The notes under the pieces were generated by a model. It saw nothing but the letters and a program-made list of their open reading frames with translations, had not been told where the DNA came from and ran no database searches. Both the position numbers and the translations under genes were made by a program. From the IMG/VR virus record IMGVR_UViG_3300027782_000025, positions 210,626 through 274,625 of that record: a stretch of 64,000 nucleotides of DNA; one strand, 5' to 3'. Shown here piece after piece: positions 4,000 through 60,883 of this stretch (position 1 is its first letter; the number at the start of each line of letters is the position of its first letter).

Positions 4000-4046
4000 T
4001 ACTATGGCTGTTTGGCACAACACAAGCTTAGATCTTTTTATGTATA

Positions 4047-24960: not shown

Positions 24961-24961
24961 T

Positions 24962-27590: not shown

Positions 27591-27591
27591 T

Positions 27592-28161: not shown

Positions 28162-28162
28162 T

Positions 28163-29239
<1,077 letters not shown>

Positions 29240-32056: not shown

Positions 32057-35000
32057 ATGGATATTGGAACTATATTAAGGCTGCAAGGCCCAGTACCGAC
32101 TAATTTAGCTCCAAATAAGTTTTATTCTGGAACCATCTTTTTTTTCGAAGATGACGCTTTCTTGTTTTATGCTGGCGGCAATAACGGCTACAATAGAGCC
32201 ACATATATAAGCAAAATAAATATTGGCGCCGGAAGCGTAAATGGGTTTAACTTCGATACAAACACGTTAGCCTTGAGCGGCGGCCCAATAACTAGAACTG
32301 GCACGATAAAAATAGATCTTATCGAGAATCTGGCTGTGGTGGGGCAGTACGGTTCATCGACCACGATACCAATCATAACCGCTAATTCGCTTGGATTCGT
32401 TACTAGAATGAGCGAAGTGCAAAACGATACGGCTGGCGGTACTGTCACGCTCATGGAAATGGATTCAGATGATTTAGAAATATATGGATTACCAACACAA
32501 TTACCGACATGTCCTCCACCAGCCGTGCCGCCGCCGGTCCAATGTGATGAGTTAACTGAATTAGGATTTTTAGCAACCGACACTAAGCCAGCTGACATCT
32601 GCATAAGCCCAGACGATGGTTTTTTATATGTCGCTAATAATGGTAGTATTTCAATCTATAAGCGTATAACAGGAACCGGCTTGCTGCAAGCATTAAGCCC
32701 TGTGATTATTTCTGGGATTGGTAATGCTATTATTATAAGCTCCGATGGTAAAAACATATACGTTATTAACGACACAAATAGTATCGACATGTTTTGGCGA
32801 AATACCACTAACGGCTTATTGACATCAATCGGATCCATTGCTACTGGCAACACGCCGGTTGATATGTGCATATCTGCTGATGGTAAGAATGTTTATGCTG
32901 TAAACCTTCTGGATGACACTATTTCAGTATTTGGGCGTGATGACACGACAGGCTTGCTAACATCATTAGGCGACATCGCTGCTGGCACCGAACCGAATTA
33001 CATTGCAGTAAGCCCTGATGGCAAGAATGTTTATGTTATCCACCGTGGCTCAGCGTCGCGCACGATATCTATTTATGCACGCAATACTACATCTGGTTTG
33101 TTAACTATAACAACGTCTATCGCTACTGGCGTTGCGCGTGGTATCGCGATTAGTCCAAATGGTAAAAATGTATACGTTTCTGATCTCGATAATGTCATAG
33201 TTAACTATGGTAGAAACACCACGACAGGTCTTCTGACTAAAAAAGAAACCTTTGCATCTAATGCGCCTTGGGGTATTGTGATTAGCGCTGATGGCACAAG
33301 CGCTTATATTAGCAGTATGAATAATAGCATAAGCATTTTTAGACGTAATGTCACCACTGGCTCATTCTCCGCAGTTGGGCAAATAGCAGCTAGGGGTGGT
33401 TATAACCTTTGCATTAGCTATGATGGTTTAAATGTTTATGTGCCAAATGTGAATTTAGATTCGATAACAATGTTCTCAAGGAAGAATTGCACGCCACCTA
33501 GCACTCCGACACCGACACAGGTAGATCTTAGACGCTATCTTGTTAGAGCGACTCGCGGAGGTACTGCTGAGCAAGCATCAGATGTGGAATATTGGTCGTC
33601 TGGTGATGGCTATGGAGGCACCACATGCATGATAGATCTGGTCGCCAATAATATTTATACAACTGGAGCTAATCCAGAATTCGCAGGTCTGCCGCCGTTG
33701 CCAGCTTTTAATTCGATTATAAATGCCAAAAAGGTAACGAAATATTCAGCCAAACCATATGATACATATGCTTGGAAAAAACTCGCGACTGGTCACGGCA
33801 TGGTGGCTGTAGTTAAGACCGATGGCTCTTTATGGGTCGGCGATGAAAGTATATCTAAAGGCACTGGACTTAGGAAGATTACCAGTTTTAAACGTTTAAA
33901 TAATGGGGTTGTAGTTAATGTCATTCCAGCGCCATCTAATTTTATAGATGTTAGGACCACAAAATGGCCAGATCAAAGCACAACTGATTTTGTCAAGTTA
34001 AGAGCTTTCACTTCTGATGGTGCTACATATTCTAGTTCATATGGCTGGAATACTAGCACTGCGCCAGACACTATGACTTTGGAATCCGGACCAGGCGGAC
34101 TACCAATCACGGAAGTGCCGAATTATTCCTATAATGGCTATACTCATTATTTCGAAACTTATTTAATGACACTAACATCAAGGAGGTGGGTGGCCTACGG
34201 CAATAACACTAACGGCCAATGTGGTACAAGCACTATAGTATCACCGATAAGAAATTTCTACATTAAAGATCTTGATAATGCACTGGTAGTATCAGCTGGT
34301 CAGTTGCATACAATGGCTATATTACCAGGCGGAATATTAGTTGGCTGCGGAGATAGCATTCAAGGTCAGTTGGGTAATAACTCTAAATTTACAGCTAATT
34401 CTAAATTTACCCAAATAGGCACTGATAGAGATTGGAAGTCAGTTTATGCAGGTGATAGTTTTAGCATAGCCATAAAAAATGACGGCACAGCGTATGCGAC
34501 TGGCTTTAACCCGCCAGGCTTGCCAGTATACAGCAATAAGACATTATTTAATTTCACTCAAATACCAAATATTACTGGTGCAGTGGAAGCGTTTGGCTTT
34601 AACGATCCATTTATATTCTGCAGCACTGCACCCCGACGAACTGATTGCTTTGCCGGTTGGAGCCCAAGCCTCAGCACTCTGACAATTCCATTATATAGTG
34701 GCGACACTGTTTTATCAAATAATGGAGCGGGCTTTTTCGGCTATGCATCGAGCGGCACGTCGCTATATTCGATCGTTTTAAACAATCTTGGTTCTGGTAT
34801 TTTCTCTATTGCATTCTTGAACAATGGTCAGTTGACACTTAACAGTAATATATCTGCTACTAATACAAAATTGTTTGCTAATGGCGACATTATTACGATT
34901 AACATCCCATCATTAAAAGGTGACACAACAAGTTGGGATACTGTTAATGGCAGATACCTTGTAACTGACACTAGCGATTTGAGATACGTTAAACTATTAT

Positions 35001-37363
35001 GTGCGCCGGCCCCAACGCCTGTGCCTACACCAACACCGACACCACCGACGCCAACTCCAACTTGCTTTGATCGGTGGGGTGGAGAACCGAAAGGCTTTTT
35101 CGGTCCGTTTACTTATTCGGAATATAATCCGTTTTATATCTTAGCCCCTAGGAGGCCACCATACATTCCTAGCGATCCAATACCAATGCTGCAGGCACCT
35201 TTAGCTGAAAGTACGGTAAATCCAATTAGGCCATATAATGGCGAATTAGTTATTACTAGCAGGCTTTATAATTTATACGCACGTGGGTTAATTTACGATG
35301 ATGGTCTCAGATTTTTTTGGCTAAACGACAAGAATGGTAAAGTAGAAACTACCCCATTTATTGTGGGAGACCTAGTTACTTTCCGTAATGACGCTAACAA
35401 TAATGAACGAAACCCGCCAACTAACTGGATAAACACAGAATACCTTATCACTAACATAGAGCTGGGCGTGCATACTATAATTTGCCGCCCCACGCCGACG
35501 CCAACACCGGCTCCAACGCTTGAATGCGGTAAATTAACACTAAGGCAGACTGCATCTTTTGGCGGTAATCATCAAGCTATGATAGTTTCTGAGAAATATG
35601 AGGTTAAGATTTTATGCACAGCTGATGCTGTTACTAATGCAGTATCTGTTTTTGTTATAAATTCAGATGGATCATTAACCTTTTATAATTCATATTTAGC
35701 CGGCCTAAACCCACGTGATATAGTGATGTCATCAAATAATCAATATATCTATGTGATCACACAGAGTGGTTTAGTTACCTTTCTTAGACCAGCAGGAACC
35801 TCGCCAGTTATAAATTTAATCGATACTGATACTAGATTTACTTCATTTAATGGAGCAAGGCTTTACATTTCGCCTGATAATTCATTCTTATATATTTCTA
35901 TCTTAAATGCTATAAAAATAGTTAAACTTAACGGCATACCTGATAAGACTAGCGTAGTATTAACAACACCTATCGCAGGCGAAGTATGTTATATGCTTGG
36001 GTCTAGTGATGGAAAGTATCTCTACCATGTTTCTTCAGATGCAAATAAGATATCGGCTTTCATAAGAAATTCTAGCAATGGATCGCTGATCTTAATTAGA
36101 GAATTAAATATTGAAGGCACACAACCACGACATGCGACTTTAGCTTTCTCCGAAAAGTTCATATTTATTTCTAGCATTGGTACTAGTCTAATATCAGCTT
36201 TCATGAGAGACCCAACTAGCGGAGACATTAATTATGCCTCAACACCAAGCACAAGTATCGGCTTGGCAGGCACGCGAACTAATGGGATACTTGCCACAGC
36301 CGATAACTCTTTATATATCGCCGATTTCCAATTCAGCACTTTATATGAATACAAAATAGATCCCGGCACAGGCAATATCACCTCATCGGGACAAACGTTG
36401 CCAAATGTGGTTTATGGAAATGACATAAAAATTAATGCTGCTAATAAAACGCTTTACGTCTTAAGCGGCGCTGGTGCTATTGGTGATATAATAGTTTACG
36501 ACAGAGTATATTGTCCACCGACCCCTACGCCAACACCATTAACACCTTCCCAAACACCAACGCCATTGACATTTCCTTCTTTAGGTGGCAAAAGGTTAGT
36601 GGTAAGTTATTCTGCTACTCAAGCGACTACATCTAAACTGTTTACGATCAATGAAATGAATGGTGATAAAATAGCAGAGTCAGTTATTAATCTACCATAT
36701 AACGCTTTGCGTCGTATCTCAGCATACGACGGTACATTATATGCTTCTGCTGTTCCTTCAAATAGTGCTATTGTTTTAAATAAAGAACAAATTGGTATAA
36801 TTGATACAAATGGTGTTTTTAGTTCTCTGAATGATACTTCAAGCGCATATGTTTTGTCAGGAAAGTTTTGCATGGTTGGCTACCATTCTTATATAGCTAT
36901 AATATATAACACTATCTTCCAGGCATCATATTTTGCTTCTAAAACGCAATTCTACGGTGGAGCTACAAAACTAGGCGCCAACTTTAATAATAACCAAGTA
37001 ATAAACGATTTCACCGTTAGCCCGAGTGGTGAAATATTCTTTGTAAGCCCTAGTTGGGGCAATGATCCAAAGTCGCCAACAGGTCAATTATACGTTTATT
37101 ATACGAATACATCCATCAATCCAGTCCAGATCGGACTTACCCAATATGGCGGTCTATCATTTATGTGTTGGGCTGGGAGTAGTCTTTCTTTTGATGGCAG
37201 GATGAATGACGCTATTTATTATTTAATCGGCCCACAACTACACTACCTAGAAATATTTAGAGATAATAATGGAACTCCAATTTCTGTTAAAGATTACTTT
37301 ATAGATAGAATGACAGGTTTTGACATCACAGGTGTTGGTATCACAGGTATCACAGTTATATAG
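32057..37363 (+). CDS. 1768-aa fibre/appendage protein: YAGGxNG anchor, lactonase-like propellers, RCC1-like region, FxxGDxIT domains, PT linkers
   Basis: ISPDGKNVY blade repeats, GQLG/W.SV.AG RCC1-like motifs, four P/T-rich linkers. Confidence 0.9.
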   Translation: MDIGTILRLQGPVPTNLAPNKFYSGTIFFFEDDAFLFYAGGNNGYNRATYISKINIGAGSVNGFNFDTNTLALSGGPITRTGTIKIDLIENLAVVGQYGSSTTIPIITANSLGFVTRMSEVQNDTAGGTVTLMEMDSDDLEIYGLPTQLPTCPPPAVPPPVQCDELTELGFLATDTKPADICISPDDGFLYVANNGSISIYKRITGTGLLQALSPVIISGIGNAIIISSDGKNIYVINDTNSIDMFWRNTTNGLLTSIGSIATGNTPVDMCISADGKNVYAVNLLDDTISVFGRDDTTGLLTSLGDIAAGTEPNYIAVSPDGKNVYVIHRGSASRTISIYARNTTSGLLTITTSIATGVARGIAISPNGKNVYVSDLDNVIVNYGRNTTTGLLTKKETFASNAPWGIVISADGTSAYISSMNNSISIFRRNVTTGSFSAVGQIAARGGYNLCISYDGLNVYVPNVNLDSITMFSRKNCTPPSTPTPTQVDLRRYLVRATRGGTAEQASDVEYWSSGDGYGGTTCMIDLVANNIYTTGANPEFAGLPPLPAFNSIINAKKVTKYSAKPYDTYAWKKLATGHGMVAVVKTDGSLWVGDESISKGTGLRKITSFKRLNNGVVVNVIPAPSNFIDVRTTKWPDQSTTDFVKLRAFTSDGATYSSSYGWNTSTAPDTMTLESGPGGLPITEVPNYSYNGYTHYFETYLMTLTSRRWVAYGNNTNGQCGTSTIVSPIRNFYIKDLDNALVVSAGQLHTMAILPGGILVGCGDSIQGQLGNNSKFTANSKFTQIGTDRDWKSVYAGDSFSIAIKNDGTAYATGFNPPGLPVYSNKTLFNFTQIPNITGAVEAFGFNDPFIFCSTAPRRTDCFAGWSPSLSTLTIPLYSGDTVLSNNGAGFFGYASSGTSLYSIVLNNLGSGIFSIAFLNNGQLTLNSNISATNTKLFANGDIITINIPSLKGDTTSWDTVNGRYLVTDTSDLRYVKLLCAPAPTPVPTPTPTPPTPTPTCFDRWGGEPKGFFGPFTYSEYNPFYILAPRRPPYIPSDPIPMLQAPLAESTVNPIRPYNGELVITSRLYNLYARGLIYDDGLRFFWLNDKNGKVETTPFIVGDLVTFRNDANNNERNPPTNWINTEYLITNIELGVHTIICRPTPTPTPAPTLECGKLTLRQTASFGGNHQAMIVSEKYEVKILCTADAVTNAVSVFVINSDGSLTFYNSYLAGLNPRDIVMSSNNQYIYVITQSGLVTFLRPAGTSPVINLIDTDTRFTSFNGARLYISPDNSFLYISILNAIKIVKLNGIPDKTSVVLTTPIAGEVCYMLGSSDGKYLYHVSSDANKISAFIRNSSNGSLILIRELNIEGTQPRHATLAFSEKFIFISSIGTSLISAFMRDPTSGDINYASTPSTSIGLAGTRTNGILATADNSLYIADFQFSTLYEYKIDPGTGNITSSGQTLPNVVYGNDIKINAANKTLYVLSGAGAIGDIIVYDRVYCPPTPTPTPLTPSQTPTPLTFPSLGGKRLVVSYSATQATTSKLFTINEMNGDKIAESVINLPYNALRRISAYDGTLYASAVPSNSAIVLNKEQIGIIDTNGVFSSLNDTSSAYVLSGKFCMVGYHSYIAIIYNTIFQASYFASKTQFYGGATKLGANFNNNQVINDFTVSPSGEIFFVSPSWGNDPKSPTGQLYVYYTNTSINPVQIGLTQYGGLSFMCWAGSSLSFDGRMNDAIYYLIGPQLHYLEIFRDNNGTPISVKDYFIDRMTGFDITGVGITGITVI

Positions 37364-37371
37364 AGCAATAT

Positions 37372-39993: not shown

Positions 39994-40000
39994 GTGAAAA

Positions 40001-41641: not shown

Positions 41642-41694
41642 GAATGGTATATAAATCGGTGCAAAAATTAAAGTAGACTAAGGATGACTAGAAT

Positions 41695-42153: not shown

Positions 42154-42162
42154 AGGGCAATT

Positions 42163-42738
42163 ATGGCTAATTATTTCACCACTATACAAGTCAGAAGAGA
42201 CGTTTCTGCTAATTGGTCGGTTAAAAATCCGACTTTAGCGAGCGGCGAATTCGGCTATGAATTAGACACTGTCAGGCTAAAAATCGGTGATGGCGTAACA
42301 CCATGGAACTTTTTGGATTACTTTGCTGGCAGCGGCGCTGGCGGTGGCGGCGGCAGTGGGACAGTAACTAGCGTCAATGTTACATCAGTAGATTTAGACG
42401 TGGCTGGCGCCCCAATTACTGCTGCAGGGACAATCGACCTATCACTTAAGACCACAGGGGTTTTGTCTGGAACATACGGCTCTACCGGCAGCATTCCAAT
42501 AATCACTGTAGATTCTAAGGGAAGAATCAGCAAAATCGTTACCACTAATCTGGCCAATATATTTCTAACTAACGTAATTCATGATGATACCTTGCTTGGC
42601 AGCGGCACACCATCCAGTCCGTTGGGTGTAGATCGAAACATAGATGGTGGAATGGCCCTTTCTGACTTTGGATCAGACGGTGATCTAAGCGGCATTTACG
42701 AAGGTTTCCCCGAATTCATGGATGCTGGAGGACCATAA
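42163..42738 (+). CDS. Short fibre/adaptor protein with Mtd_N-like anchor
   Basis: IQVRRD...W...NPTLASGEFGYELDT.RLKIGDG..PW. Confidence 0.85.
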   Translation: MANYFTTIQVRRDVSANWSVKNPTLASGEFGYELDTVRLKIGDGVTPWNFLDYFAGSGAGGGGGSGTVTSVNVTSVDLDVAGAPITAAGTIDLSLKTTGVLSGTYGSTGSIPIITVDSKGRISKIVTTNLANIFLTNVIHDDTLLGSGTPSSPLGVDRNIDGGMALSDFGSDGDLSGIYEGFPEFMDAGGP

Positions 42739-42739
42739 G

Positions 42740-44491: not shown

Positions 44492-44500
44492 GAGATAATC

Positions 44501-45136
44501 ATGACAATTAGAGCACAGTTCAGAAGAGGCACAGTCGCAGAATGGGATAATATAAATCCGATCTTATTGATAGGTGAAATTGGTTACGCTACTGACGCTA
44601 GTAGATTTAAAATCGGCGATGGGATTAAGAATTGGCGCGATTTACCATTCGTTTCCGCCGGTGGTGCTGGTACTTTAACGGCTATAACCGCAGGCAAAGG
44701 TTTAATAGGTGGACTGATAACTACGTCAGGCACTATAGCTGTCGATGATTCTGTAATTATGACTCTTGACACGCCACAGACCATATACAATAAAACTCTT
44801 AAATCTCCTAGCGAAATAGTTAATCGGATAGCTCATACCGGTGGAGTTTTAAATATAGACGCTAGTTTGGCTAATGATCATTATATATATCTGACTGGAA
44901 ATATAACAAACATAAATTTTGAGAACATTGACCACATTGGTAAGATGGTATATATTCGATTATTATTCGAATCGACAAGCATTCATTCGATAAATTGGCC
45001 GCCGTATGTTATGTGGCCAAATAGCCAACAGCCAATGCTTAGTGGCAGCGGCAGGATAGACATCATTGGTTTAATGACTTTCGACGATGGCGTGAATTTT
45101 TTTGGGAAAAAAGAATCTAGTAACTTAAGCGTTTGA
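44501..45136 (+). CDS. Short fibre/adaptor protein: Mtd_N-like anchor + INWP...DDG domain
   Basis: QFRRGT...NPILLIGEIGYATD..RFKIGDG; paralogous to the N-termini of the 42740 and 45149 genes. Confidence 0.85.
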   Translation: MTIRAQFRRGTVAEWDNINPILLIGEIGYATDASRFKIGDGIKNWRDLPFVSAGGAGTLTAITAGKGLIGGLITTSGTIAVDDSVIMTLDTPQTIYNKTLKSPSEIVNRIAHTGGVLNIDASLANDHYIYLTGNITNINFENIDHIGKMVYIRLLFESTSIHSINWPPYVMWPNSQQPMLSGSGRIDIIGLMTFDDGVNFFGKKESSNLSV

Positions 45137-45148
45137 TAGGATCAATTA

Positions 45149-54100: not shown

Positions 54101-56914
54101 GCATTTATAGCGATCAAAGATGATAATACACTTTGGGGCGTCGGTAAAGGTTACGAACCACCAAGCGGTCAATTATCCGGCTACCATCGCTATGGTGGCG
54201 GTATCGATGCTTACTTTTCTTTTCTTACTCAGATCGGCACCGACACTGATTGGATAAGATGCTTCTCTACTCAATATGGCGCATCATTTGCTATCAAAGA
54301 TGATGGCACTCTTTGGGCGACAGGGTTAAATGCTTTATCGCCATCGCAGAGTTATAGCATACTTGGTTTCAACCCTGCTACAACCATCGGCTTGATGTAC
54401 TATACTCAAGTCGGGACAGATACTGACTGGAATAATATCGTTAGTATGTCGAGCACAATTGGGCTAAAGAGTGATGGGACTGTTTGGGGGATCGGGCAGA
54501 ATCAATACGGCCAATTAGGCCAAGGATCCACAAACGCTGTCGGGCCACTGTTTACTAAATTAAACAATGCGACCGATTGGACCCAAATTGCTCAGATGAA
54601 TTATGGCACTGCCTTGTTGGGCTCCTTGGTGCCTGCTCCGACACCTACTCCAACACCAACACCTACCCCAGCTTCTTATTATGTTTATGGCTCTGGTAGA
54701 AATCAAGACCATCAACTTGGTATAGACACATTTGGTGCTGATTTGAATAACATGACATTGTTGACTAGTGGCAACGCTTCATCAGTCACAATATCGAATA
54801 CTTCTAGTATGCTATTGATGAATGATGGTACGCCAACACCGACACCCACGCCCACACCTACACCCACGCCCACGCCAACGCCATCTGCTAACACAGGTGC
54901 GATTTTTGGTTTTGGTTTAACCTCGAATTCAATGAATGTAAGCATCACTAACTTAGTTAATAGCTCTGGAGTCGTAGCAGCAGATGTTACCTATATCGGA
55001 CTAGTAAGGTCAAGTATAGCGGCTGCAGCTATTGGTGGCGGTAAGGCGATTTTTGCTTATGGTGTAACTGACCAATGGTTACCTATGGTTACATTTAATA
55101 CTGTCACAAATACCGGCGATTTAGAAACAGCACAAGACCTAGTGGGAACACGCAGAAAGAATCTAGCCGCCGCCCCTTATGGTCAAGGTCAAGCAGTATT
55201 TGCCTTTGGTGTAAATGAATCAGCGGTGGCGGTTTCAATTTCTAACAAAGTATCATCGCTCGGTGTTATTGAGACAGATAGCTTCGCTGTAGGAACATCT
55301 AGATCGCTTTTGGCAGCTGCCGGTTATGGTGCAGATAAAGGCATATTTAGTTATGGGCTAACTACTGCCGGGGTTGTAACTGTCACGAATTTGGTAAGCA
55401 ATCTCGGTGATATTATTGTCGACAGTGCCGGCGTCGGTACTGCTCGGTCAGGGCTAGCGGCTTCATCTTATGGCAGCGGTAAAGCGATATTCGGCTTTGG
55501 TAACACACAGGCATATTTATCGATCACCAATTTAATAAACGAAAATGGCGTAGTAGCAACCGATACTGCTGGCGTCGGCACAGAACGTAGTAACCTAGCA
55601 GCAGCCGGCTACGGGTCAGGCAATGCGATCTTTGGTTATGGTTATAGCGGAAGCGGTTCATATGTCTCACTAAGCAATCTGGTTTCGAATGTTGGTGTGG
55701 TAGCTACAGACACTGCTGGCATTGGAATGGCACGAGTAAACTTAGCAGCTGCTAGTCTTTTAGCTGCCCCTACACCTAGCCCAACGCCGACTCCAACGCC
55801 TACACCAACGCCGACTCCAACGCCAACGCCTACACCAACGCCAACATCGACACATTGTTTATCACAGATCCAGAGAATAGCAACTCCCAATGGCATGTTT
55901 GCGCATGGAAATATAGTATCTCGTGACCAAAAATATGTCTATGCTAAAATGTATGGTTCTCAAACCGGCTTTGTCCAAGGTGTGGCTCAATATAAGATTA
56001 CAGCTTTAGGAACATTAGAATATTTATCTTTATACAGTACCGGGGGATGGGATATATATGAGTCGCAATCTGGGACACATGTCTATACTATCGATAACCA
56101 AAACGATACAATAGCGATTCTATCCAGAAATACCACAGATGGCACACTGGGGACACCGACTATATTGGCGACACCATACCCACCTGGTGAATTAATTGGT
56201 TCCGCTGATGGCAAGCACATTTATATAACTAATATCAACCGCGGTCCGGCGCCATATATGGCTAGAATAATGATATATGATATCAATAGCACTAACGGGA
56301 TGTTATCATACAATAACACGATAGATATTCCAGACTCATCACCAATCGCATTTTCAATGACTTTATCGCCAAGTGGTCTATATTTTTATGCTATAACTGG
56401 CGCTCCTTATGGTGTCACTAATGCTGGTAACAAACTAAACGTGTTCATACGGAATACGACCTCTGGGACGCTGATTCTAATCGATGCATTAGATATACCC
56501 GCAAATACCAGCGATATCCTGATATCATCGGATGGTCTATATTTATACACGATGGGCTTCCAGCAAAGTAACGGGATTAATAGTATCGAAATAAATACAT
56601 ATGCCATCGGTATAACAGGCGGTTTGACATCAACTGGGACCACATATGTTATGGAAGCCAACGGTGGTGTTGGTAAAACACAAATGATAGAAGCAACGGA
56701 TGGGACAGCCATCTATTGTACAAGAGGAAAATCTGGGATAGTAATCGATAAAAACCCAACGACAGGCATAATAACCGGAAGCACGGAGATTTTAAACTTA
56801 GTGCTTGGTGGAAGCGTGACTATAGCAGCTAAAAACTCAGATGTTAGATTTATCTATGTCGGTGAATATAGCAATAAGTCTATAGTGACTCTAAGCACGC
56901 TTTGTCCACCATAA
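45149..56914 (+). CDS. 3921-aa giant modular fibre/appendage protein
   Basis: Mtd_N-like anchor, WP...DGG domain, FG-GAP, several RCC1 blocks (DGTLWxxGxNxxGQLG), STDGINW BNR-like block, lactonase-like propellers, DTAGVGTAR repeats, PT linkers. Confidence 0.93.
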   Translation: MSIKIQVRRDTASNWLSVNPILSSGEIGLETDTLRFKYGDGTLKWEDLPYPSIGGGSVQSISAGYGLLGGIITSQGEINVDGNIALDVLSEQALANKAFKNKSGTFTNIFVDNGILNLDLSASNNFIVNFEEDIDSFTTSNNPENGMAFVITLVLNITTGSAVTWPSNIIWPDNVFPTSSAVGTTDIFKLLTIDGGSSFYAYIVGQGYNTNSIPPNFLDEFLSPSDGKPGDGFGISAAISKDGRTAVVGSIYNQYSGAAYVFRRSDNRWLQIAKLLGEDNESAFGTSVAISEYGDVIAVGAPQEGTNDIGAAYIFTEANDSWLNNKIIPEDSADITAKNLVRLFGSSVSLSNDGTLLIVGAPDFDVPDNQNTGAVYVFRSDGPPTPPPPPINNYYIYGTGKNTDCELGLGDKNNRALFTLIKSATPLQIAVGKNYALYIKHDGTLWATGKTGLGLPSDPMNQSYRNFIQLGSDYWLDVKANNKGTTLLINADGSLWGCGYNQDGNLGIGITTNVNDLIMLDDNNWRAISCCSSSSYGIKSDGTLWSWGDNTYGQLGHGDLYPRLYPAEVGVDAGTFGTNVTGGTGGTGGTGGTGGTGGTGGTNPVYTDWVYISQGSSAHHVFAIRNDGTNATQEDGTLWAWGKNNLYQLGLNDTIDRSTPTRVNSEFWIKVEAGTDSSAGITSAGELFVWGYNSYGELGLNDVVVRPIPTRNAFFPAFFSDLSFNGHTLIALDTIGYMYGAGFNYYGQLSQGFFSANDPSNQIRMLTQITKSGGWIIATILDSLIASRDSLLPPPVAGPTPTPVTPTPTPTSTPTPTPTPTPTPTPTPAECATVWTGRTLPGLSIGTIAASPDKIVITTADGGTAAVSTDGINWSLSSIPSTTWVDAMYANNLFLVSGYDAVNVGTQRLISSPDGINWTPIALPIGIAGKMASGNSIYLIFSVWGTSFLRSNDLITWLPGTLPTPIDWICAQVIHNGVYFLATSSNSDTYIISTDGINWTVSSFPSSTSRNWQATTFGLGLFVAINYSANPPLSLTSSDGVTWVSNTMPLVGKYSRVIFGNGFFLALIEESTYGALSYDGRTWSTVTLPYSSSWKNGVYAHDMFIVSDLGNNQNYITSPCKKTPTPTPSGTYTWHYVISGLNTRGQLGLSDIADRDQFIAQSWNTLPVNSNDFPCISHGYDHTMMVKTDGSLYAYGNNDRGQLGLPTSMGAYLNVPVLVSAGPYHTVSCGYKYSIAVAANGDIFATGANESGQLGVGDLTDKMGLTQLVGYKAYIGTDPKVGATPCVATGKTATVMVLLIRMTSGDLIPRYYSWGLNQSGQLGQSNSDYSYQTSTPSEIANLNASTQPAVYGGILNHHFFAIALDSDYNHIFCGWGNNDRGQLGNALINIDNPMLGAVSGWSSDSIKIFNVAIGQSFTAFIAQTGIGSPASLLISGANDRGQIGVPVGNSTNIFTEVPFPVNYTSWDKISAGADFIYATARQTGSRNTFGWGDNTYGQLDGGPTAPNSYISPTLLDARESETLNTNHLGFGFGGYWAYYTDTPSASACAIRLKYNGVSTRIGSNGLSFAVGDVITVAGIGGLGAWSSVDGVYKIKDFDNTNGMIVECVSPGCFNGWNTASGSLAAPIVMGRAITSNGGAVVTSTATTGNVPWEVNFYCNVTPTPTPTPTPTPTPTPTPTPSAGGSAFAAGAAGLISAKLGVITPKFTKFSPDNTSWKFAAVDSFYGAFLIKSDGTLWGSGYNTYGQLGTGTNKTVTDMVQIGTDNDWKFITADAASTIAMKDDGTIYGAGYNDSGTLGLGDRLPRMFFTLINSDTWLTIKTYRHQTVGVRSDGKLFIWGLFSDVFYSSNNINSPPRDVPFELVDAGSGYIKADCGYNTLYAIKSDGSLYGMGENGSAQIMMPPSTIIESMTKLTSSENWVDIAASDQALLLLNDIGEIFSFGIGEVLGTGKRYTPNGLEKIDKDFKYTKVFATTNVAGALKTNKRLMVWGNNYYNALSLALVNKISTPQISRPDNMYDHVALSATFSIAIGAVNLTPTPTPTIPNVLYVNGRNIYGNLATGDTIGRGSFYEILRDNAKAAAASESACAVVKSDGTLWTAGTNFNGILGQGSNNMLKQYTLMQVGTDTNWVNVESNSLSAFAAYKENGDIYVWGQSGVPDLIPFNASNPGIFTSPTLVALADISKIVYLYITDLIVIKDNGSLWAQGNNSNGNLGLGANATINTLTQVNAGPFKTSRTSYAYNGSNGMYIKTDGTLWATGANGLQTPCSGFLGTGDTSIVNVLTKIGTDTNWDKVTLIWDYGAYAIKTDGTLWGCGTQILNQNNTANFGSSLTFVQIGTDTDWHDFAGTSYQELYIIKNDGSLYAAGNNLLNNFTGPIASINRINDPMTFNYVSSGLWDNGNFFVSGILVPPGPTPTPTPTPTPTGCAISSLTLTQLAPANYNSYGIAISPDDKNIYTSSTSSPPNSLPIVNIYQRNMFNGSLTLMQNISTLVNPISICVSPDGKFVYTVIDIDAKIFIYSRNATTGVLTDVGSVATETGYLYLNTTILLQPREMCISPDGKNAYVICSRGDSPNNAMIDVFTRDIVTGLLTHFETVEGDIGPNSYSICISPDGLDVYVTDYDSVNGVRLFSRNASTGSLTFNGSIASGLDPHGIIVSPDGLSVYVTSVNNGGLNDQISIYTRDAATGLLTDAGSIATGDKPYQLSISDDGYSVYTANKTGQKISVYSRASDGSLTADGSVSTSGQYPYRSVVSHDGKNVYMTNLDSNHISVFARTCGSAPPPNTNLLVSGMRTSSIELGVPASYVPAVPNNYTFYGVSNVATWDGVFGNTNVLFATKGGELWACGRNNFGQLGIGNTTNQAELVQVGNGTDWSYVVTSGVSTLALKTDGTLWGTGYNSFGELGLGHTNQVNTFTQVGVETDHNNNIAMSTTGSSYVYRSGILYATGNNANYQLGTGNTINLSTFNAMDAQSWYNGPWMMAALPSAFIAIKDDNTLWGVGKGYEPPSGQLSGYHRYGGGIDAYFSFLTQIGTDTDWIRCFSTQYGASFAIKDDGTLWATGLNALSPSQSYSILGFNPATTIGLMYYTQVGTDTDWNNIVSMSSTIGLKSDGTVWGIGQNQYGQLGQGSTNAVGPLFTKLNNATDWTQIAQMNYGTALLGSLVPAPTPTPTPTPTPASYYVYGSGRNQDHQLGIDTFGADLNNMTLLTSGNASSVTISNTSSMLLMNDGTPTPTPTPTPTPTPTPTPSANTGAIFGFGLTSNSMNVSITNLVNSSGVVAADVTYIGLVRSSIAAAAIGGGKAIFAYGVTDQWLPMVTFNTVTNTGDLETAQDLVGTRRKNLAAAPYGQGQAVFAFGVNESAVAVSISNKVSSLGVIETDSFAVGTSRSLLAAAGYGADKGIFSYGLTTAGVVTVTNLVSNLGDIIVDSAGVGTARSGLAASSYGSGKAIFGFGNTQAYLSITNLINENGVVATDTAGVGTERSNLAAAGYGSGNAIFGYGYSGSGSYVSLSNLVSNVGVVATDTAGIGMARVNLAAASLLAAPTPSPTPTPTPTPTPTPTPTPTPTPTSTHCLSQIQRIATPNGMFAHGNIVSRDQKYVYAKMYGSQTGFVQGVAQYKITALGTLEYLSLYSTGGWDIYESQSGTHVYTIDNQNDTIAILSRNTTDGTLGTPTILATPYPPGELIGSADGKHIYITNINRGPAPYMARIMIYDINSTNGMLSYNNTIDIPDSSPIAFSMTLSPSGLYFYAITGAPYGVTNAGNKLNVFIRNTTSGTLILIDALDIPANTSDILISSDGLYLYTMGFQQSNGINSIEINTYAIGITGGLTSTGTTYVMEANGGVGKTQMIEATDGTAIYCTRGKSGIVIDKNPTTGIITGSTEILNLVLGGSVTIAAKNSDVRFIYVGEYSNKSIVTLSTLCPP
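46889..46951 (+). repeat. In-frame 9-nt tandem repeat (ACTGGCGGC) x7 encoding (Thr-Gly-Gly)7
   Basis: Six perfect units plus one near-perfect unit. Confidence 0.97.
47543..47632 (+). repeat. (Pro-Thr)n linker-encoding repeat
   Basis: CCN-ACN codon pairs. Confidence 0.9.
50129..50188 (+). repeat. (Thr-Pro)n linker-encoding repeat
   Basis: ACN-CCN codon pairs. Confidence 0.9.
54830..54883 (+). repeat. (Thr-Pro)n linker-encoding repeat
   Basis: ACN-CCN codon pairs. Confidence 0.9.
55769..55846 (+). repeat. (Pro-Thr)n linker-encoding repeat
   Basis: CCN-ACN codon pairs. Confidence 0.9.
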
Positions 56915-56953
56915 TTTAATTTTTTTAGATATCAAGATTTAAGCGAGAATACC

Positions 56954-59900
56954 ATGACGACAAGCAACAGTTTATTATTAGCCGGCGGTAATTTTTACGG
57001 CCAGCTAGGAGCATCAAGTACTCTTAAACCAACATTTGAATATTGGGCTTTTTCTAGTAAGTATGGTCCTTGGGCTAAAGCATCAACATCAGACAGCGGT
57101 CATACACTATTGATTAATATTGACCAGACATTGTGGGCGTCAGGGAATAACGAATACGGGCAGCTGGGGATTGGCACCACCGGCGCTGGCTATACACAAT
57201 TTACTAAAATTAATGATACTATACAATGGATGGACGTTGCTACTTCAAACTGGGGTTCTTATGGCCTCAGTACAGTAGGCAATTTATATATTTGGGGAAG
57301 ACAGGCAAGCAATAATTTTAATCCCATTGTTTCCATCACAGAGTTAGTTGTTTTAGATTATGTGGGCGGTAAGGTAAAATTCAAAAGCCTTGCTACCGGC
57401 AGTGGTACAAATCACATGCTTTTGATCGACAATGATGGTCAACTGTGGGGATGGGGTTCAAATACACGAGGACAATTAGGCTTAGGTGATACTTCAGTGC
57501 GCATAAATCCTGTTTTGATAAACGCAAATGAATGGCTATCTGCTGCAGTCGGAGATTCTTTTTCTATAGTATTAAGGAAAGATAACACACCATGGGGCAC
57601 TGGTGCTAATGATAGTTTTCAGTTAGGCCAAGGCTCATTCGACTCAAATGATAAAACAGTCTTGACAGCAATAAATACAACATCATCATCTTCTAAGATC
57701 ATTACCCAAATCGCTGCAGGAACAAAGAGTGCCCTTGCTCTAGACAACACTGGGCAGGTTTATGGCTGGGGTGGTAATACTTATGGCGAATTAGGCCTAG
57801 GACATAATTTAAAAGTGCCTGATGCAGCACTTATCCAGAACCTGCCAGGACCAGCAAGCTATATAGCTATTAAAGACCATTCTATTATAGTAGTAAGCAA
57901 CGAAATGCCAACTCCTACACCATGTGTGGCTGGAGAATTAATTATCGCCGGCACAGTGGCGACGGCCGTTAATGCCTACGATTTAGCGATATCAAGTGAT
58001 CAGAAGAATGTCTATGTGGTTCATTTAACCGGAGACATAATATCTATCTATGATCGAAATATAACCACTGGCGCACTTACAAGTGCAGGGACCATAGCCA
58101 CAGGCGAATCATCTACAGCTGTTATATTATCAAACGACGGTATCAATGTCTATGTGGTTAACTCTGCCGGCCAAACAATTTTTATCTATAATAGGAATTT
58201 AACCACTGGCGCACTTACCAGCGCCGGAACCATAGCGACAGAAGATGCACCAAGAGACATAGTCGCATCAAATGATGGTAAAAACGTCTATGTGGTTAAT
58301 AGTCAAAGCAATACAGTCTCTATTTACGATAGAAATTTAACCACTGGCGCACTTACCAGTGCTGGAACAATAGCCACTGGTGATAGTCCATTTAATATAG
58401 CGATATCAAATGATGACAAGAATGTTTATATAAATGAATCTGCTGATGAATTAGTGATTTATAATAGAGATTTAACCACTGGCTCACTTACCAGCGCTGG
58501 AACCATAGCCACGGAGCAGGGTAGTTGGGGTATAGCGGTGTCTAGCGATGATAAGAATGTTTATGTAGTGAATGGTGCAAATGGTAGTAGCAACACTATC
58601 TCGATCTATATTAGAAATTTATCAACTGGCGCACTTGCCAGCGCTGGTACCATAGCCACTGGTACTGGTTCACTCGGGATAGCTGTACCAAATGATGGCA
58701 AGAATGTCTATGTTGTAAACTCTGTTAGTAACACACTTTCGATTTATAGCAGAAATACTACTACTGGTGCTCTAACAATCGCTAGCACTATAGCCACTGG
58801 TTCAACGCCATACAATGTTATCGTGTCAAGCGATAGCAGACATGTTTATGTATGTAACGAGACGGACGACATAATTTCGGTCTTTACCACATGTGAATCA
58901 ACACCTACTCCAACACCTACTCCAACTCCAACTCCAACTCCAACACCAACACCAACACCAACACCAACACCAACACCAACACCAACACCAACACCATGTG
59001 TTGTTGGAGATTTAATAAGCGCAGGCACGATAGCTACGGGAGAATACCCAGCTAGTTTAGCTCTGTCTATCGATCAAAAGAATATTTATGTTACTGGCAA
59101 CTACGCAATTTCTATTTATAACAGAAATTTAACGACTGGCGCACTTACCAGCGCTGGGACCATAGCCGCAACATCGGGAACAGTTGATATAGTCGCAACG
59201 GTCGACAATATTAGCGTTTATGCTGTTAGTTCTGACAGTAATTCGATATTAATCTATAATAGAGAATTGACTGCTGGGGCACTTACAAACTTTGGAACCA
59301 TTGCTACTGGTACTGGACCGCTGAGCATAACTGCGACGATTGATAATATGAGCGTATTTGCGGCTAATTCTGGAGACGATACGCTTTCGGTATACGACAG
59401 AGATATAACCACCGGCGCACTCACTAATATTGGAACTTTAGCAACTGGAGACACGCCTCGGGACTTGGCAGTATCTAATGACGGGAAGAGCATTTATGTG
59501 ACTAACCAAAATAACAATTTAATATCAATTTATAGCAGAGACTTAGTTACTAGAGTAATCACCAGCATCGGCACTATCGCAGCAGGTAGCGTGCCCTGGG
59601 GTGTAGTAGTATCTAACGATAATGATAATGTTTATGTGGTGAATGGTGGTAGCAACACAATCTCGATCTATAACCGAAACTTAACTACTGGCACACTTAC
59701 TAGCGCTGGAACCATAGCTACAGGCGATAACCCGCTCAAAATAGCTATCTCAAATGATGATACAAAAGTTTATGTGACTAGTTATGGCATAAATTCACTT
59801 TCGATTTATAATAGAAATATAGTCACCGGCGCTTTGACTAGCGTCGGTTTTATAGCCGCCGGCACTACACCATACACAGTAGTAGTATCAAATAATAATA

Positions 59901-60883
59901 AAAACGTTTATGTGACTAATTCAGGTGCAGACACAATCTCCATTTTTGCTGTTTGTGAGTTAACTCCAACACCAACCACTTCAGTCGGTGCCGTATTTGC
60001 TTTTGGTAATAATAGTTCGAATATAATCAACCTAGTTTCAGATATCGGTATTATCACTGAGGATATAAGCGTTGTTGGTACAGCTAGATATTCGGGGGCT
60101 GCGGCATCGTTCGGGACCAGCGGAACTGGCAAAGCGATCTTTGCATATGGTGTTAACGCTAGCACCCAGTCTGTTTCTTTATCGAACATCATATCCAGTG
60201 GCGGAACTGTGGCTTATGATACAGCTGGAGTAGGCACAGCAAGATATGGCTTAGCAGCTGCAGGATACGGAGCCGGCAAAGCACTATTTGGGTTTGGCGA
60301 TGCTGGAAAATATTTTCAGTCATACATTCCAGTAAGTATAACTAATCATGTCACTGACAATGGCATAATATCTTCAGATACCATAGGAGTTGGAACAACG
60401 AGATACGGCTTAGCTGCGGCTTCTTATGGCACAGACAAAGCAATATTTGGCTTCGGATTTAAAAACTCTCCTAATTTACATCTCTCTATAACTAATTTAG
60501 TATCGAATACTGGTGTTGTCTCGACCGACACGACTGGTGTTGGAACTGGTCGTCGTGATCTCGCCGCCGCTGGCTACGGAGGAGACAAAGCAGTATTCGG
60601 AGGCGGTAATGGTGATTATAATTCTGGTTCATTTGGCACCTATAATCTTGTCGATAATAATGGCATAGTTTTAAACAATAACACATTCGCGACATTCAGG
60701 CAATGGTATGGTTCAGCCTCTTCTTTTGGGCAATCTGGAGCAGAGCAAGCTATCTTTTCTTTTGGTTTTGTTCCTAACACCCAGACATCATTTACGCTGA
60801 TAATAAATAATAATGGAATACCAAGCAGCGAAGTCGCTCAGATCGGATCGGAGAAGCATAGTGCGTCTGGTGCTAAGTTATAA
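56954..60883 (+). CDS. 1309-aa appendage protein: RCC1 block, two lactonase-like propellers, DTxGVGTAR repeats
   Basis: GNNEYGQLG and GSNTRGQLG; [11 protein letters not shown]...ISIYxRNLTTGALTSAGTIATG blades; AIFGFG...GVGTARYGLAAAGYG repeats. Confidence 0.92.
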   Translation: MTTSNSLLLAGGNFYGQLGASSTLKPTFEYWAFSSKYGPWAKASTSDSGHTLLINIDQTLWASGNNEYGQLGIGTTGAGYTQFTKINDTIQWMDVATSNWGSYGLSTVGNLYIWGRQASNNFNPIVSITELVVLDYVGGKVKFKSLATGSGTNHMLLIDNDGQLWGWGSNTRGQLGLGDTSVRINPVLINANEWLSAAVGDSFSIVLRKDNTPWGTGANDSFQLGQGSFDSNDKTVLTAINTTSSSSKIITQIAAGTKSALALDNTGQVYGWGGNTYGELGLGHNLKVPDAALIQNLPGPASYIAIKDHSIIVVSNEMPTPTPCVAGELIIAGTVATAVNAYDLAISSDQKNVYVVHLTGDIISIYDRNITTGALTSAGTIATGESSTAVILSNDGINVYVVNSAGQTIFIYNRNLTTGALTSAGTIATEDAPRDIVASNDGKNVYVVNSQSNTVSIYDRNLTTGALTSAGTIATGDSPFNIAISNDDKNVYINESADELVIYNRDLTTGSLTSAGTIATEQGSWGIAVSSDDKNVYVVNGANGSSNTISIYIRNLSTGALASAGTIATGTGSLGIAVPNDGKNVYVVNSVSNTLSIYSRNTTTGALTIASTIATGSTPYNVIVSSDSRHVYVCNETDDIISVFTTCESTPTPTPTPTPTPTPTPTPTPTPTPTPTPTPTPCVVGDLISAGTIATGEYPASLALSIDQKNIYVTGNYAISIYNRNLTTGALTSAGTIAATSGTVDIVATVDNISVYAVSSDSNSILIYNRELTAGALTNFGTIATGTGPLSITATIDNMSVFAANSGDDTLSVYDRDITTGALTNIGTLATGDTPRDLAVSNDGKSIYVTNQNNNLISIYSRDLVTRVITSIGTIAAGSVPWGVVVSNDNDNVYVVNGGSNTISIYNRNLTTGTLTSAGTIATGDNPLKIAISNDDTKVYVTSYGINSLSIYNRNIVTGALTSVGFIAAGTTPYTVVVSNNNKNVYVTNSGADTISIFAVCELTPTPTTSVGAVFAFGNNSSNIINLVSDIGIITEDISVVGTARYSGAAASFGTSGTGKAIFAYGVNASTQSVSLSNIISSGGTVAYDTAGVGTARYGLAAAGYGAGKALFGFGDAGKYFQSYIPVSITNHVTDNGIISSDTIGVGTTRYGLAAASYGTDKAIFGFGFKNSPNLHLSITNLVSNTGVVSTDTTGVGTGRRDLAAAGYGGDKAVFGGGNGDYNSGSFGTYNLVDNNGIVLNNNTFATFRQWYGSASSFGQSGAEQAIFSFGFVPNTQTSFTLIINNNGIPSSEVAQIGSEKHSASGAKL
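58901..58996 (+). repeat. (Thr-Pro)16 repeat including perfect (ACACCA)9
   Basis: Perfect hexamer run 58943-58996. Confidence 0.95.

What the first reader, a model, noticed from the sequence alone, without database searches (positions are those of the whole stretch)
32057..60883. Appendage modules are bracketed by Cys pairs placed right at the PT linkers (disulfide-clamped cassettes)
Seen: ten modules begin with a Cys and end with a Cys, in most cases just after and just before a P/T-rich linker. Examples: VQCDEL...RKNCTPP; TDCFAG...LLCAPAPTP; PTCFDR...IICRPTP; LECGKL...VYCPPTP; PAECAT...SPCKKTP; SACAIR...FYCNVTP; PTGCAI...RTCGSAPPP; THCLSQ...TLCPP-stop; TPCVAG...TTCESTP; TPCVVG...AVCELTP. 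The pattern spans unrelated folds (lactonase-like and BNR-like propellers, FxxGDxIT domains). RCC1 blocks, DTAGVG blocks and the 61622 gene lack it. Established: propeller N- and C-termini are adjacent. Inference: a terminal disulfide or metal clamp closes each module as a self-contained, swappable unit, which is unusual for a cytoplasmically assembled virion.
Basis: partly seen in the sequence, partly recalled or inferred. Interest (0 to 1): 0.66.

Follow-up and report, generated by a model that had tools for sequence, protein, structure and literature searches.

The report
Cysteine-clamped modules in phage fibre proteins
In the giant tail-fibre-like proteins of an uncultured jumbo phage, most globular modules between Pro-Thr linkers begin and end with a cysteine placed where the two chain ends meet, so each module is probably locked by one disulfide outside the cell: a known protein trick, used here unusually systematically.

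Summary
All ten motif pairs sit where stated. Cys lies within 3 residues of 12 of 42 PT-linker edges, against 1.4 expected (0 of 10,000 shuffles). At least nine more bracketed modules occur in three giant genes upstream on the same 275-kb contig.

For the propellers the geometry fits well. An AlphaFold model (pLDDT 92.5) shows P4 324-647 as exactly seven 46-residue blades, cut in the strand C-D hairpin of blade 7. Its first and last residues are the two Cys, replacing the adjacent N|L of the internal RN|LTTG turns. Paralogues shift the cut but keep the loop length. The Asp-box propeller is cut at D|G of SxDGxxW. In the small CFxxW domain the two Cys are 2 of 5 invariant columns.

N-side and C-side Cys co-occur within modules, not across linkers. 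Outside homologues use the same cut without Cys (60 of 62 arrays).

I could not test bond formation, S-S distances or presence in the virion. End-to-end domain disulfides (hemopexin, VWF A1) and virion disulfides (Pam3, Milano) are already known. Verdict: probable terminal disulfide clamps, a new variant of a known kind. The metal-clamp reading is unsupported, and "swappable" is only partly supported.

The parts
32057..37363 (+). P1, a 1768-aa modular protein: N-terminal region, lactonase propeller, RCC1 block, two small CFxxW domains, a second lactonase-like propeller and a C-terminal domain.
   Evidence: ORF. Pfam Lactonase 2.5e-45 plus RCC1 families. Cys and linker map. A 91%-identical orthologue, P0160, keeps all 20 Cys.
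32543..33490 (+). Module P1 C163-C478: a 7-blade lactonase/YVTN-type propeller with a Cys at each end.
   Evidence: Seven blade-HMM units span 161-476. The cut is shifted (5 loop residues on the C side, 1 on the N side) but the total loop length of 6 is kept.
34646..35002 (+). Module P1 C864-C982: small CFxxW...FxxGDxhxh...hhC domain.
   Evidence: In alignment A2 the only invariant columns are C5, F6, W9, F81 and C123, at about 22% identity. The fold is unresolved (AlphaFold pLDDT 56).
35063..35485 (+). Module P1 C1003-C1143: small CFxxW domain with an insertion, PT linkers on both sides.
   Evidence: Both Cys are kept in P0160, where this region is about 54% identical locally.
35525..36514 (+). 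Module P1 C1157-C1486: a divergent lactonase-like propeller.
   Evidence: It aligns with the other propeller modules, with both Cys in the shared columns. The two junction halves are colinear, though the scores are weak.
45149..56914 (+). P3, a 3921-aa tail-fibre-like protein: Mtd_N head, FG-GAP, several RCC1 propellers, four Cys-bracketed modules and a DTAGVG block.
   Evidence: Pfam Mtd_N 8.5e-11, RCC1-like 8.8e-167, Lactonase 5.8e-32. PHROG tail-fibre families match the N-terminus.
47639..48508 (+). Module P3 C831-C1120: an Asp-box (SxDGxxW) propeller of seven units.
   Evidence: Written in repeat register, the C-terminal Cys replaces the D and the N-terminal Cys replaces the G of SxDGxxW. 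The paralogue P5 36-361 lacks the terminal pair.
49790..50122 (+). Module P3 C1548-C1658: an apparent circular permutant of the small domain. The old termini are joined as EC(1607)-VSPG-C(1612)F, and the new termini are again Cys.
   Evidence: The native order gives two swapped partial HMM matches (hmm 68-102, then hmm 6-42). An in-silico permutation gives one continuous match (hmm 6-102). The same layout occurs in Ga around residues 3173-3296.
52424..53476 (+). Module P3 C2426-C2776: a 7-blade lactonase propeller.
   Evidence: Seven blade units span 2426-2775. It is only 57% identical in relative L009, between 94-98% identical neighbours, and both end Cys are kept.
55856..56905 (+). Module P3 C3570-C3919: the C-terminal lactonase-like propeller. 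The protein ends ...TLCPP-stop.
   Evidence: It is 63% identical in L009, with both end Cys kept and the internal C3857 lost.
56954..60883 (+). P4, 1309 aa: an RCC1 propeller, two bracketed lactonase propellers and a DTAGVG block.
   Evidence: Pfam Lactonase 1.2e-61 and RCC1-like 1.9e-39. All five Cys are kept in the 86% identical L009 orthologue.
57923..58894 (+). Module P4 C324-C647: the reference 7-blade propeller, exactly 7.00 repeats from Cys to Cys.
   Evidence: AlphaFold pLDDT 92.5, pTM 0.90, 28 strands. Its best PDB match has TM 0.79 (6-phosphogluconolactonase), and the YVTN propeller 1L0Q is 32% identical. Unit table.
58997..59956 (+). Module P4 C682-C1001: a second 7-blade propeller, 55% identical to the first.
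   Evidence: The junction halves align colinearly with zero offset.
58901..58996 (+). A (TP)16 linker between the two P4 propellers, given as an example of the PT linkers that flank the clamped modules.
   Evidence: P4 residues 650-681.
62858..63880 (+). Negative case: the P5 413-753 lactonase propeller between PT linkers, without the terminal pair (only C746 on the C side).
   Evidence: In the alignment its chain ends appear to fall at a different repeat phase.

Best explanation
These are tail-fibre-like appendage proteins of a contractile-tailed jumbo phage, built as globular modules strung on Pro-Thr linkers. In most non-RCC1 modules the chain enters and leaves at one point, and a Cys sits on each side of that point. 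In the propellers this point is the strand C-D hairpin of the last blade: the N-terminal strand supplies strand D (the 'velcro' closure), and the two Cys take the places of two sequence-adjacent turn residues of an internal blade. The most likely mechanism runs as follows. The thiols stay reduced while the proteins fold and assemble in the cytoplasm. After lysis, in oxygenated water, each adjacent pair oxidises to one intramodule disulfide. That bond closes the velcro covalently and joins the incoming linker directly to the outgoing linker. Pulling or protease nicking at the linkers then cannot peel the terminal strand off, and each module hangs as a load-free pendant on the thread, as in the hemopexin propeller and the VWF A1 domain. 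Shown here: the pattern, its enrichment, the repeat-phase geometry, the pairing statistics, the conservation, and the fact that the pair is lineage-specific. Inferred: spatial contact of the two Cys, oxidation outside the cell, the mechanical role, and presence of P1, P4 and P5 in the virion.
For: (1) Cys is about 8-10-fold enriched at linker edges; no shuffle in 10,000 reaches the observed count. (2) AlphaFold model of P4 316-655: pLDDT 92.5 and 28 strands. The first strand has the length of a D strand (8 residues) and the last three have the A, B and C lengths. The segment from Cys to Cys is exactly seven 46-residue units. The first residue is a Cys where internal units have L/I/T, and the last is a Cys where they have N/D. 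(3) Loop-length compensation. The loop residues on the C side plus those on the N side number 3+3, 3+3, 5+1, 5+1 and 4+3 in five paralogues, against 6 in internal loops. Both halves of the virtual junction align to the internal-junction profile with the same offset: 0, 0, -2 and -2, and -1 (C half) against 0 (N half) in P3a. (4) The same logic holds in an unrelated repeat: the Asp-box propeller is cut at D|G of SxDGxxW with Cys on both sides. (5) In the small domain both Cys are among only five invariant columns at about 22% identity, including one protein from another source, P0017. An apparent natural circular permutant joins the old ends through four residues. (6) Cys co-occur within a module (p=0.019) but not across a linker. 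(7) At least nine further bracketed modules lie elsewhere on the contig. (8) In relatives, 16 of 16 bracket Cys are kept, including in modules only 57-63% identical, while two internal Cys are lost and five gained (one in P0160, four in L009). (9) Codons are 11 TGT and 9 TGC with unrelated flanks, so selection acts on the residue. [quoted passage not shown]
Against: No coordinates could be obtained, so no S-S or C-beta distance was measured. The model's termini are its least confident parts (pLDDT 61 and 75 in the end blocks). The small-domain model failed (pLDDT 56). The cytoplasm is reducing, and no Trx, Grx or DsbA gene was found in the 275 kb. The Erv1 search was uninformative because its control found nothing. 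Most RCC1 propellers, the P5 lactonase propeller and the P5 Asp-box propeller do without the pair, so it is not required for folding. Of 62 seven-blade arrays in outside homologues with the same cut phase, only two carry both Cys, one of them the near-identical orthologue. Conservation in the close relatives is not statistically different from that of internal Cys (16/16 against 20/22). Paralogy inflates the apparent number of independent cases.
Confidence: 0.65

Rival explanations
1. The terminal Cys form intermolecular or intermodule disulfides instead. They could link chain to chain within a trimeric fibre, fibre to fibre or fibre to baseplate (as in Pam3), or bridge a linker so that it loops out.
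For: Inter-subunit disulfides are the documented kind in phage virions (Pam3 fibres to wedge, PMC9942802; Milano). The Cys sit at exposed domain ends, and the Mtd_N heads suggest trimers.
Against: Cys on the two sides of one linker do not co-occur (7/10/12/8, p=0.33), whereas the two ends of one module do. The repeat phase places the two Cys of one module at adjacent turn positions. One Cys per level in a trimer gives an odd number of thiols.
Confidence: 0.12
2. No bond forms. The Cys are free thiols kept for another reason, such as packing at the chain ends or a transient role in folding or assembly, or are simply inherited through repeated duplication of a few founder modules.
For: The cytoplasm is reducing and no oxidase gene was found. 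Homologues with the same cut fold without Cys. Many modules are paralogues. Internal 'C-ISPDG' Cys show that free buried thiols are tolerated.
Against: The pair recurs in three unrelated module types and at shifted cut positions with compensating loop lengths. Both ends are present or absent together. Bracket Cys persist through 40% divergence while internal ones turn over. Two adjacent surface thiols in oxygenated water would be expected to oxidise (established chemistry; inference).
Confidence: 0.15
3. The two Cys form a metal clamp (Zn, Fe or Cu) rather than a disulfide.
For: Metal ions are known on fibre axes of other phages (my recollection, not tested here).
Against: There are only two thiols per module, and no further conserved His, Cys or Asp appears near the ends in the alignments. 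At adjacent positions of a tight turn the geometry suits a disulfide better than a tetrahedral site.
Confidence: 0.04
4. The Cys codons are a by-product of a DNA-level junction motif used for cassette recombination at linker boundaries.
For: PT linkers are repetitive DNA, and the modules behave as units of divergence.
Against: The 20 bracket codons are 11 TGT and 9 TGC, with no shared flanking nucleotides. P0081 and Gb 601/610 carry the pair without PT linkers.
Confidence: 0.02

Closest known systems
Hemopexin-like domain of matrix metalloproteinases and hemopexin
   Same: [quoted passage not shown] There is one bond per domain, detectable as a gel shift (PMC3045013).
   Different: It has four blades, an unrelated sequence (no hemopexin Pfam match here) and is a eukaryotic secreted protein oxidised in the ER. 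Here the propellers are 7-blade lactonase/YVTN-type and Asp-box-type in a phage, with the Cys at the very chain ends inside the C-D hairpin, and the bond is unverified.
Von Willebrand factor A1 domain
   Same: A long-range disulfide links Cys near the N and C termini of a domain that sits between Pro/Thr/Ser-rich mucin-like linkers which transmit tensile force. The core inside the bond is shielded from unfolding (10.1101/2022.01.13.476208).
   Different: It has a vWA fold and is a vertebrate plasma protein, and its linker O-glycosylation is proven. Here glycosylation of the PT linkers is only suggested by a neighbouring glycosyltransferase cluster, and any force on the fibre is inferred.
Disulfide networks in tailed-phage virions (cyanophage Pam3, Agrobacterium phage Milano)
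   Same: Cytoplasmically assembled tailed phages carry structural disulfides, shown by cryo-EM and DTT sensitivity in both phages, and also by MS in Pam3. In Pam3 the tail fibres are involved.
   Different: The disulfides these papers emphasise are inter-subunit crosslinks (fibre to wedge, sheath to collar to neck, capsid). Here each bond would close a single module on itself, repeated about 20 times along giant fibres.
Lactonase / YVTN 7-bladed beta-propellers (PF10282; PDB 6NAU, 1RI6, 1L0Q)
   Same: Same fold and family (Pfam E-values 1e-27 to 1e-61; Foldseek TM 0.70-0.79; 32% identity to the archaeal S-layer YVTN propeller). Outside homologues start at the same repeat phase.
   Different: The terminal Cys pair is absent from 60 of 62 seven-blade arrays in the nearest outside homologues.
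CBM2 cellulose-binding domains next to Pro-Thr linkers in Cellulomonas fimi cellulases
   Same: From memory only: a bacterial extracellular domain beside a PT linker, with a disulfide tying its N- and C-terminal regions together.
   Different: I could not verify this in the paper library (one search returned nothing relevant). It is a secreted enzyme oxidised outside the cytoplasm and has a different fold.

Membership tests
Lactonase/YVTN 7-bladed beta-propeller (PF10282) | Profile match above the curated cut-off | tested here: met
   P1 155.6 bits, P4 209.3, P3 111.7 and P5 96.7, against a cut-off of 21.7.
Lactonase/YVTN 7-bladed beta-propeller (PF10282) | Seven four-stranded blades, closed ring | tested here: met
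   The AlphaFold model has 28 strands, pLDDT 92.5 and pTM 0.90. Foldseek gives TM 0.79 to 6NAU and 0.78 to 1RI6.
Lactonase/YVTN 7-bladed beta-propeller (PF10282) | Lactonase catalytic activity | not tested
   Active-site residues were not examined. A binding rather than catalytic role is assumed for a fibre module.
Propeller closed by a terminal disulfide (hemopexin-type closure; functional class, not a homology family) | One Cys in the first and one in the last structural element of the ring, adjacent in space | tested here: inconclusive
   The positions are met in sequence and repeat phase. Spatial distance could not be measured because no coordinates are returned.
Propeller closed by a terminal disulfide (hemopexin-type closure; functional class, not a homology family) | The disulfide is actually formed in the mature protein | not testable with these tools
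   This needs non-reducing gels or MS, or a structure.
Hemopexin repeat family (homology) | Sequence match to hemopexin repeats; four blades | tested here: not met
   No hemopexin family appears among the Pfam matches, and there are seven blades.
BNR/Asp-box propeller | Repeated SxDGxxW motif once per blade | tested here: met
   P3 829-1122 has six motif copies plus the Cys-split seventh.
BNR/Asp-box propeller | Profile match to a BNR or sialidase-type family | tested here: not met
   There is no Pfam match over P3 829-1122 at E<=0.01. Only Ga 2138-2295 has a sub-threshold Sortilin-Vps10 match (27.9 bits against a cut-off of 33).
Phage tail fibre with Mtd_N head (PF18454) | N-terminal Mtd_N domain above the cut-off; tail-fibre PHROGs | tested here: met
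   P3 scores 42 bits and ORF 42722 scores 44.9 bits against a cut-off of 26.3. PHROG tail-fibre families match down to 1e-13. This is not met for P1, P4 and P5, which are placed in the appendage set only by neighbourhood and shared modules.
Phage tail fibre with Mtd_N head (PF18454) | Presence in the virion | not testable with these tools
   The phage is known only from metagenomes. A tail sheath gene on the contig shows it is a contractile-tailed phage.
Disulfide-crosslinked phage virion (Milano/Pam3 type) | Inter-subunit disulfides between structural proteins | not tested
   The pairing statistics favour intramodule bonds. No structure is available.

The most novel reading that the evidence does not exclude
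This phage lineage has evolved a general 'plug-in' rule for fibre building. Under this rule, any module whose chain ends meet can be strung on a (possibly glycosylated) Pro-Thr thread and is then sealed after lysis by one end-to-end disulfide. The thread, not the module, would carry the load, and the module could diversify or be replaced freely. The bonds would form without any dedicated oxidase and would act as an inside/outside redox switch: open and assembly-competent in the cell, locked in water. This would be a convergent, phage-made counterpart of the disulfide-clamped, mucin-linked domains of animal extracellular proteins.
Probability: 0.3. Interest if true: 0.75.

Novelty: new variant of a known kind. 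Interest (0 to 1): 0.55.

Why it matters
If the clamps are real, they show how a phage builds very long, flexible, modular receptor-binding appendages (up to 4,400 residues) that survive shear and proteases outside the cell. It would do so with the same design as animal extracellular matrix and plasma proteins, but starting from a reducing cytoplasm. The clamps also mark the exact boundaries of self-contained binding modules. That is useful for cutting out domains for expression, for reading host-range variation (the clamped propellers are the parts that differ between close relatives), and for engineering fibres. The rule that Cys pairs appear only where the chain is cut in a blade hairpin is directly testable on other metagenomic phages.

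Tried and rejected
(1) S-S distance. I used strand order and repeat phase instead.

(2) Small-domain structure. AlphaFold on six sequences gave pLDDT 56. I did not run a fold search on it. The Atlas feature search gave only weak phage-tail and head-fibre look-alikes (0.84-0.91). The fold is unresolved.

(3) Junction-profile score as a continuity test. Total scores of virtual junctions equalled those of order-swapped controls because HMMER aligns the halves separately. Only the colinearity of offsets was informative.

(4) Near-full-length module HMM on outside homologues. It gave too few end-to-end alignments because of repeat slippage. I replaced it with single-blade arrays.

(5) Relatives. 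A megablast of the region against the phage records found nothing. Viral-contig scans found none with the protein, and the alignment was too variable to use. The metagenome scan found one useful relative and a copy of the same genome. A search with the small-domain region found only the near orthologue.

(6) Phage-encoded thiol oxidoreductases. Trx, Grx and DsbA are absent. The Erv1 search was uninformative because its control was silent. The contig is an estimated 70% of the genome.

(7) DNA junction motif: rejected.

(8) Disulfide across a linker: rejected on co-occurrence.

(9) Literature. I found no paper in the library on Cys-bracketed PT-linked modules in phage fibres. Absence from this library is not proof of novelty.

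(10) Cys-rich ORF 31460-32056 as a possible oxidase: it has no CxxC motif and no family match.

Full report
Context. The window is the last 64 kb of a 274,625-bp linear viral contig, with CheckV completeness of about 70%. A metagenome contig of 275,351 bp carries the same sequence and ends at the same base, inside a PT repeat. The contig encodes a DnaE-type polymerase in two parts and a DnaB-like helicase, and a tail sheath. It is therefore a contractile-tailed jumbo phage with no close cultured relative.

From 32 kb to the end, the + strand carries very large ORFs: P1 32057-37363, P2 37372-39993, P3 45149-56914, P4 56954-60883 and P5 61622-end. P3 and three smaller ORFs begin with the Mtd_N tail-fibre head, and PHROG tail-fibre families match them. 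P1, P4 and P5 share modules with P3 but have no recognised anchor. Calling them "appendages" is therefore an inference from neighbourhood.

Observation. All ten motif pairs are present exactly as written. Splitting the proteins at PT runs puts the first Cys of a bracketed module 0-5 residues after the linker and the last Cys 0-7 residues before the next. Shuffling Cys positions within each protein gives 1.4 edges with a Cys within 3 residues, against 12 observed of 42. No shuffle in 10,000 reaches the observed count.

The habit is genome-wide. Three giant genes upstream of the window carry at least nine further bracketed modules. These genes are G000:187408-200664 (4418 aa), 200677-206511 and 92987-99781 (minus strand). 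Some of their modules have no PT linker at the boundary (Gb C601/C610). Among the 28 segments bounded by linkers on both sides, N-side and C-side Cys go together (13/4/3/8, Fisher p=0.019). The two sides of one linker do not (p=0.33). The 20 bracket codons are 11 TGT and 9 TGC with unrelated flanks, so the signal lies in the residue, not in a DNA motif.

Geometry of the propellers. An AlphaFold model of P4 316-655, built on six paralogues, has pLDDT 92.5 and pTM 0.90. It matches 6-phosphogluconolactonases (TM 0.78-0.79) and the archaeal YVTN propeller 1L0Q (32% identity). It has 28 strands.

Strand lengths repeat as 6, 6, 7, 8 (A, B, C, D). The first strand is an 8-residue D strand, and the last three are A, B and C. 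Blade 7 is therefore made of the C-terminal A-B-C strands plus the N-terminal D strand, the classical velcro closure.

Cut into units, the stretch from C324 to C647 is exactly seven units of 45-49 residues. Six units begin with L/I/T-TTG and six end with RN or RD. Unit 1 instead begins with Cys, and unit 7 ends with Cys. The two Cys therefore occupy positions that are joined by a peptide bond in every internal hairpin.

By the pseudo-symmetry of the fold they should lie a few angstroms apart, which suits a disulfide. This last step is inference: no coordinates are returned.

Paralogues move the cut within the loop but keep its length. Loop residues contributed by the C side plus the N side are 3+3, 3+3, 5+1, 5+1 and 4+3, against 6 in internal loops. 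The two halves of each virtual junction align to a profile of 38 internal junctions with equal offsets.

The same logic appears in an unrelated repeat. The Asp-box propeller P3 829-1122 has seven units, and its end Cys replace the D and the G of SxDGxxW. Ga 1575-1948 does the same. The P5 lactonase propeller lacks the pair and appears to be cut at a different repeat phase. The P5 Asp-box module also lacks it.

Small domain. The "FxxGDxIT" modules form a family that starts CFxxW and ends h-h-C. In six sequences of about 22% identity (five from this contig, plus P0017 from elsewhere) the only invariant columns are C5, F6, W9, F81 and C123. Its fold could not be modelled (pLDDT 56).

P3 1548-1658 and a Ga segment contain the two halves of this domain in swapped order. 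The old ends are joined by four residues (EC-VSPG-CF), and new Cys sit at the new ends. An in-silico permutation restores one continuous profile match. This looks like a natural circular permutation and, if so, independently shows that the ends of the domain are neighbours. The scores are modest.

Conservation. In a 91% identical orthologue of P1, all 20 Cys are kept. In an 82-86% identical relative (L009) all eight bracket Cys of P3 (C-terminal half) and P4 are kept. Two internal Cys of P3 are lost and four are gained.

That relative is a mosaic. RCC1 and DTAGVG blocks are 94-98% identical, but the two bracketed propellers of P3 are 57% and 63% identical, with nearly unchanged ends. The clamped modules are thus the units that diverge, which fits receptor-binding cassettes. 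They remain positional orthologues, however, so exchange between loci is not shown.

Beyond this lineage the pair is rare. Of 62 seven-blade arrays in the best outside homologues, only P0081 and the near orthologue P0160 have both Cys. Many of these arrays are in phage-fibre-like proteins that start and end at the same repeat phase. P0081 comes from a phage-like contig in a freshwater metagenome and has no PT linkers. The pair is therefore an addition made in this lineage, not a property of the fold.

Mechanism. The best-supported reading is one intramodule disulfide per module that seals the velcro and connects the incoming linker to the outgoing one. No Trx, Grx or DsbA gene was found on the contig, and the Erv1 test was uninformative. 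Oxidation would therefore most plausibly be spontaneous after lysis.

The expected effect is resistance to peeling of the terminal strand under tension or after nicking. Documented parallels are the hemopexin propeller (PMC3045013) and the VWF A1 domain, which sits between mucin-like linkers. Structural disulfides in tailed-phage virions are established for Pam3 and Milano. The idea is therefore not exotic, but the bonds those studies emphasise are crosslinks between subunits.

Rivals are interchain bonds, free thiols, a metal site and a DNA motif. The pairing statistics, the geometry, the ligand count and the codon data weigh against them, in that order. Only experiment can exclude the first two.

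Verdict. The disulfide-clamp interpretation is probable (about 0.65) but unproven. "Metal clamp" is unsupported, "swappable" is partly supported, and "unusual for a virion" is overstated. Novelty: a new variant of a known kind.

Noticed in passing
window 22046-29188: A sugar-modification cluster lies directly upstream of the fibre genes. It holds three glycosyltransferase ORFs (22046-24010 with GT2 and GT7C domains, 24007-24960 GT1-like, 25603-26496 GT2_5) and a GDP-mannose 4,6-dehydratase (28163-29188, minus strand). The best phage matches of the first are mycobacteriophage glycosyltransferases. The Pro-Thr linkers could be O-glycosylated; this is untested.
   Followed up: partly
window 49790-50122 (P3 1548-1658); L003 around residues 3173-3296: Apparent circular permutation of the small CFxxW domain. 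The C-terminal half comes first, the old termini are joined as EC-VSPG-CF, and new Cys stand at the new termini.
   Followed up: partly
L003 (G000:187408-200664), L004 (G000:200677-206511), L005 (G000:92987-99781, minus strand): Three more giant modular genes (4418, 1944 and 2264 aa) lie outside the window. They have PT linkers and at least nine Cys-bracketed modules, including one bracketed RCC1-containing segment (Ga 3847-4372).
   Followed up: partly
L009 2-8958 versus window 51800-60883: Mosaic divergence between close relatives. The RCC1 and DTAGVG blocks of P3 are 94-98% identical, while its two Cys-bracketed propellers are 57% and 63% identical with conserved ends. In P4 the DTAGVG block (74%) and the first propeller (80%) are the variable parts.
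   Followed up: yes
window 42163-42738, 42722-44491, 44501-45136, 45149-56914: Four consecutive ORFs each start with an Mtd_N tail-fibre head domain, which suggests several alternative or stacked fibres sharing one attachment site.
   Followed up: no
window 1726-3126 and 4393-7116: The DnaE-type DNA polymerase is split into two ORFs about 1.3 kb apart. Three small ORFs without family matches lie between them (3128-3559, 3553-3999, 4047-4406).
   Followed up: no
window 31460-32056: A Cys-rich ORF (8 Cys in 198 aa, no CxxC motif, no Pfam or PHROG match) abuts the start of P1.
   Followed up: partly
window 63881-64000: The contig ends inside a (PT)n repeat of P5, and an independent 275-kb metagenome contig ends at the same base. 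This looks like an assembly break caused by the repeat, so P5 is truncated and more fibre genes may follow.
   Followed up: partly
window 54884-55780, 59981-60880; L003 residues 567-872 and 1256-1554: The DTAGVG / 'AIFGFG' repeat blocks of about 300 aa contain no Cys at all and match no Pfam family. Their fold and role are unknown.
   Followed up: no
L006 7563-10349 (P0081): A 928-aa protein on phage-like contigs from freshwater metagenomes carries a lactonase propeller with the same Cys...Cys closure (C536, C861) but no PT linkers. It is the only independent outside case found.
   Followed up: partly
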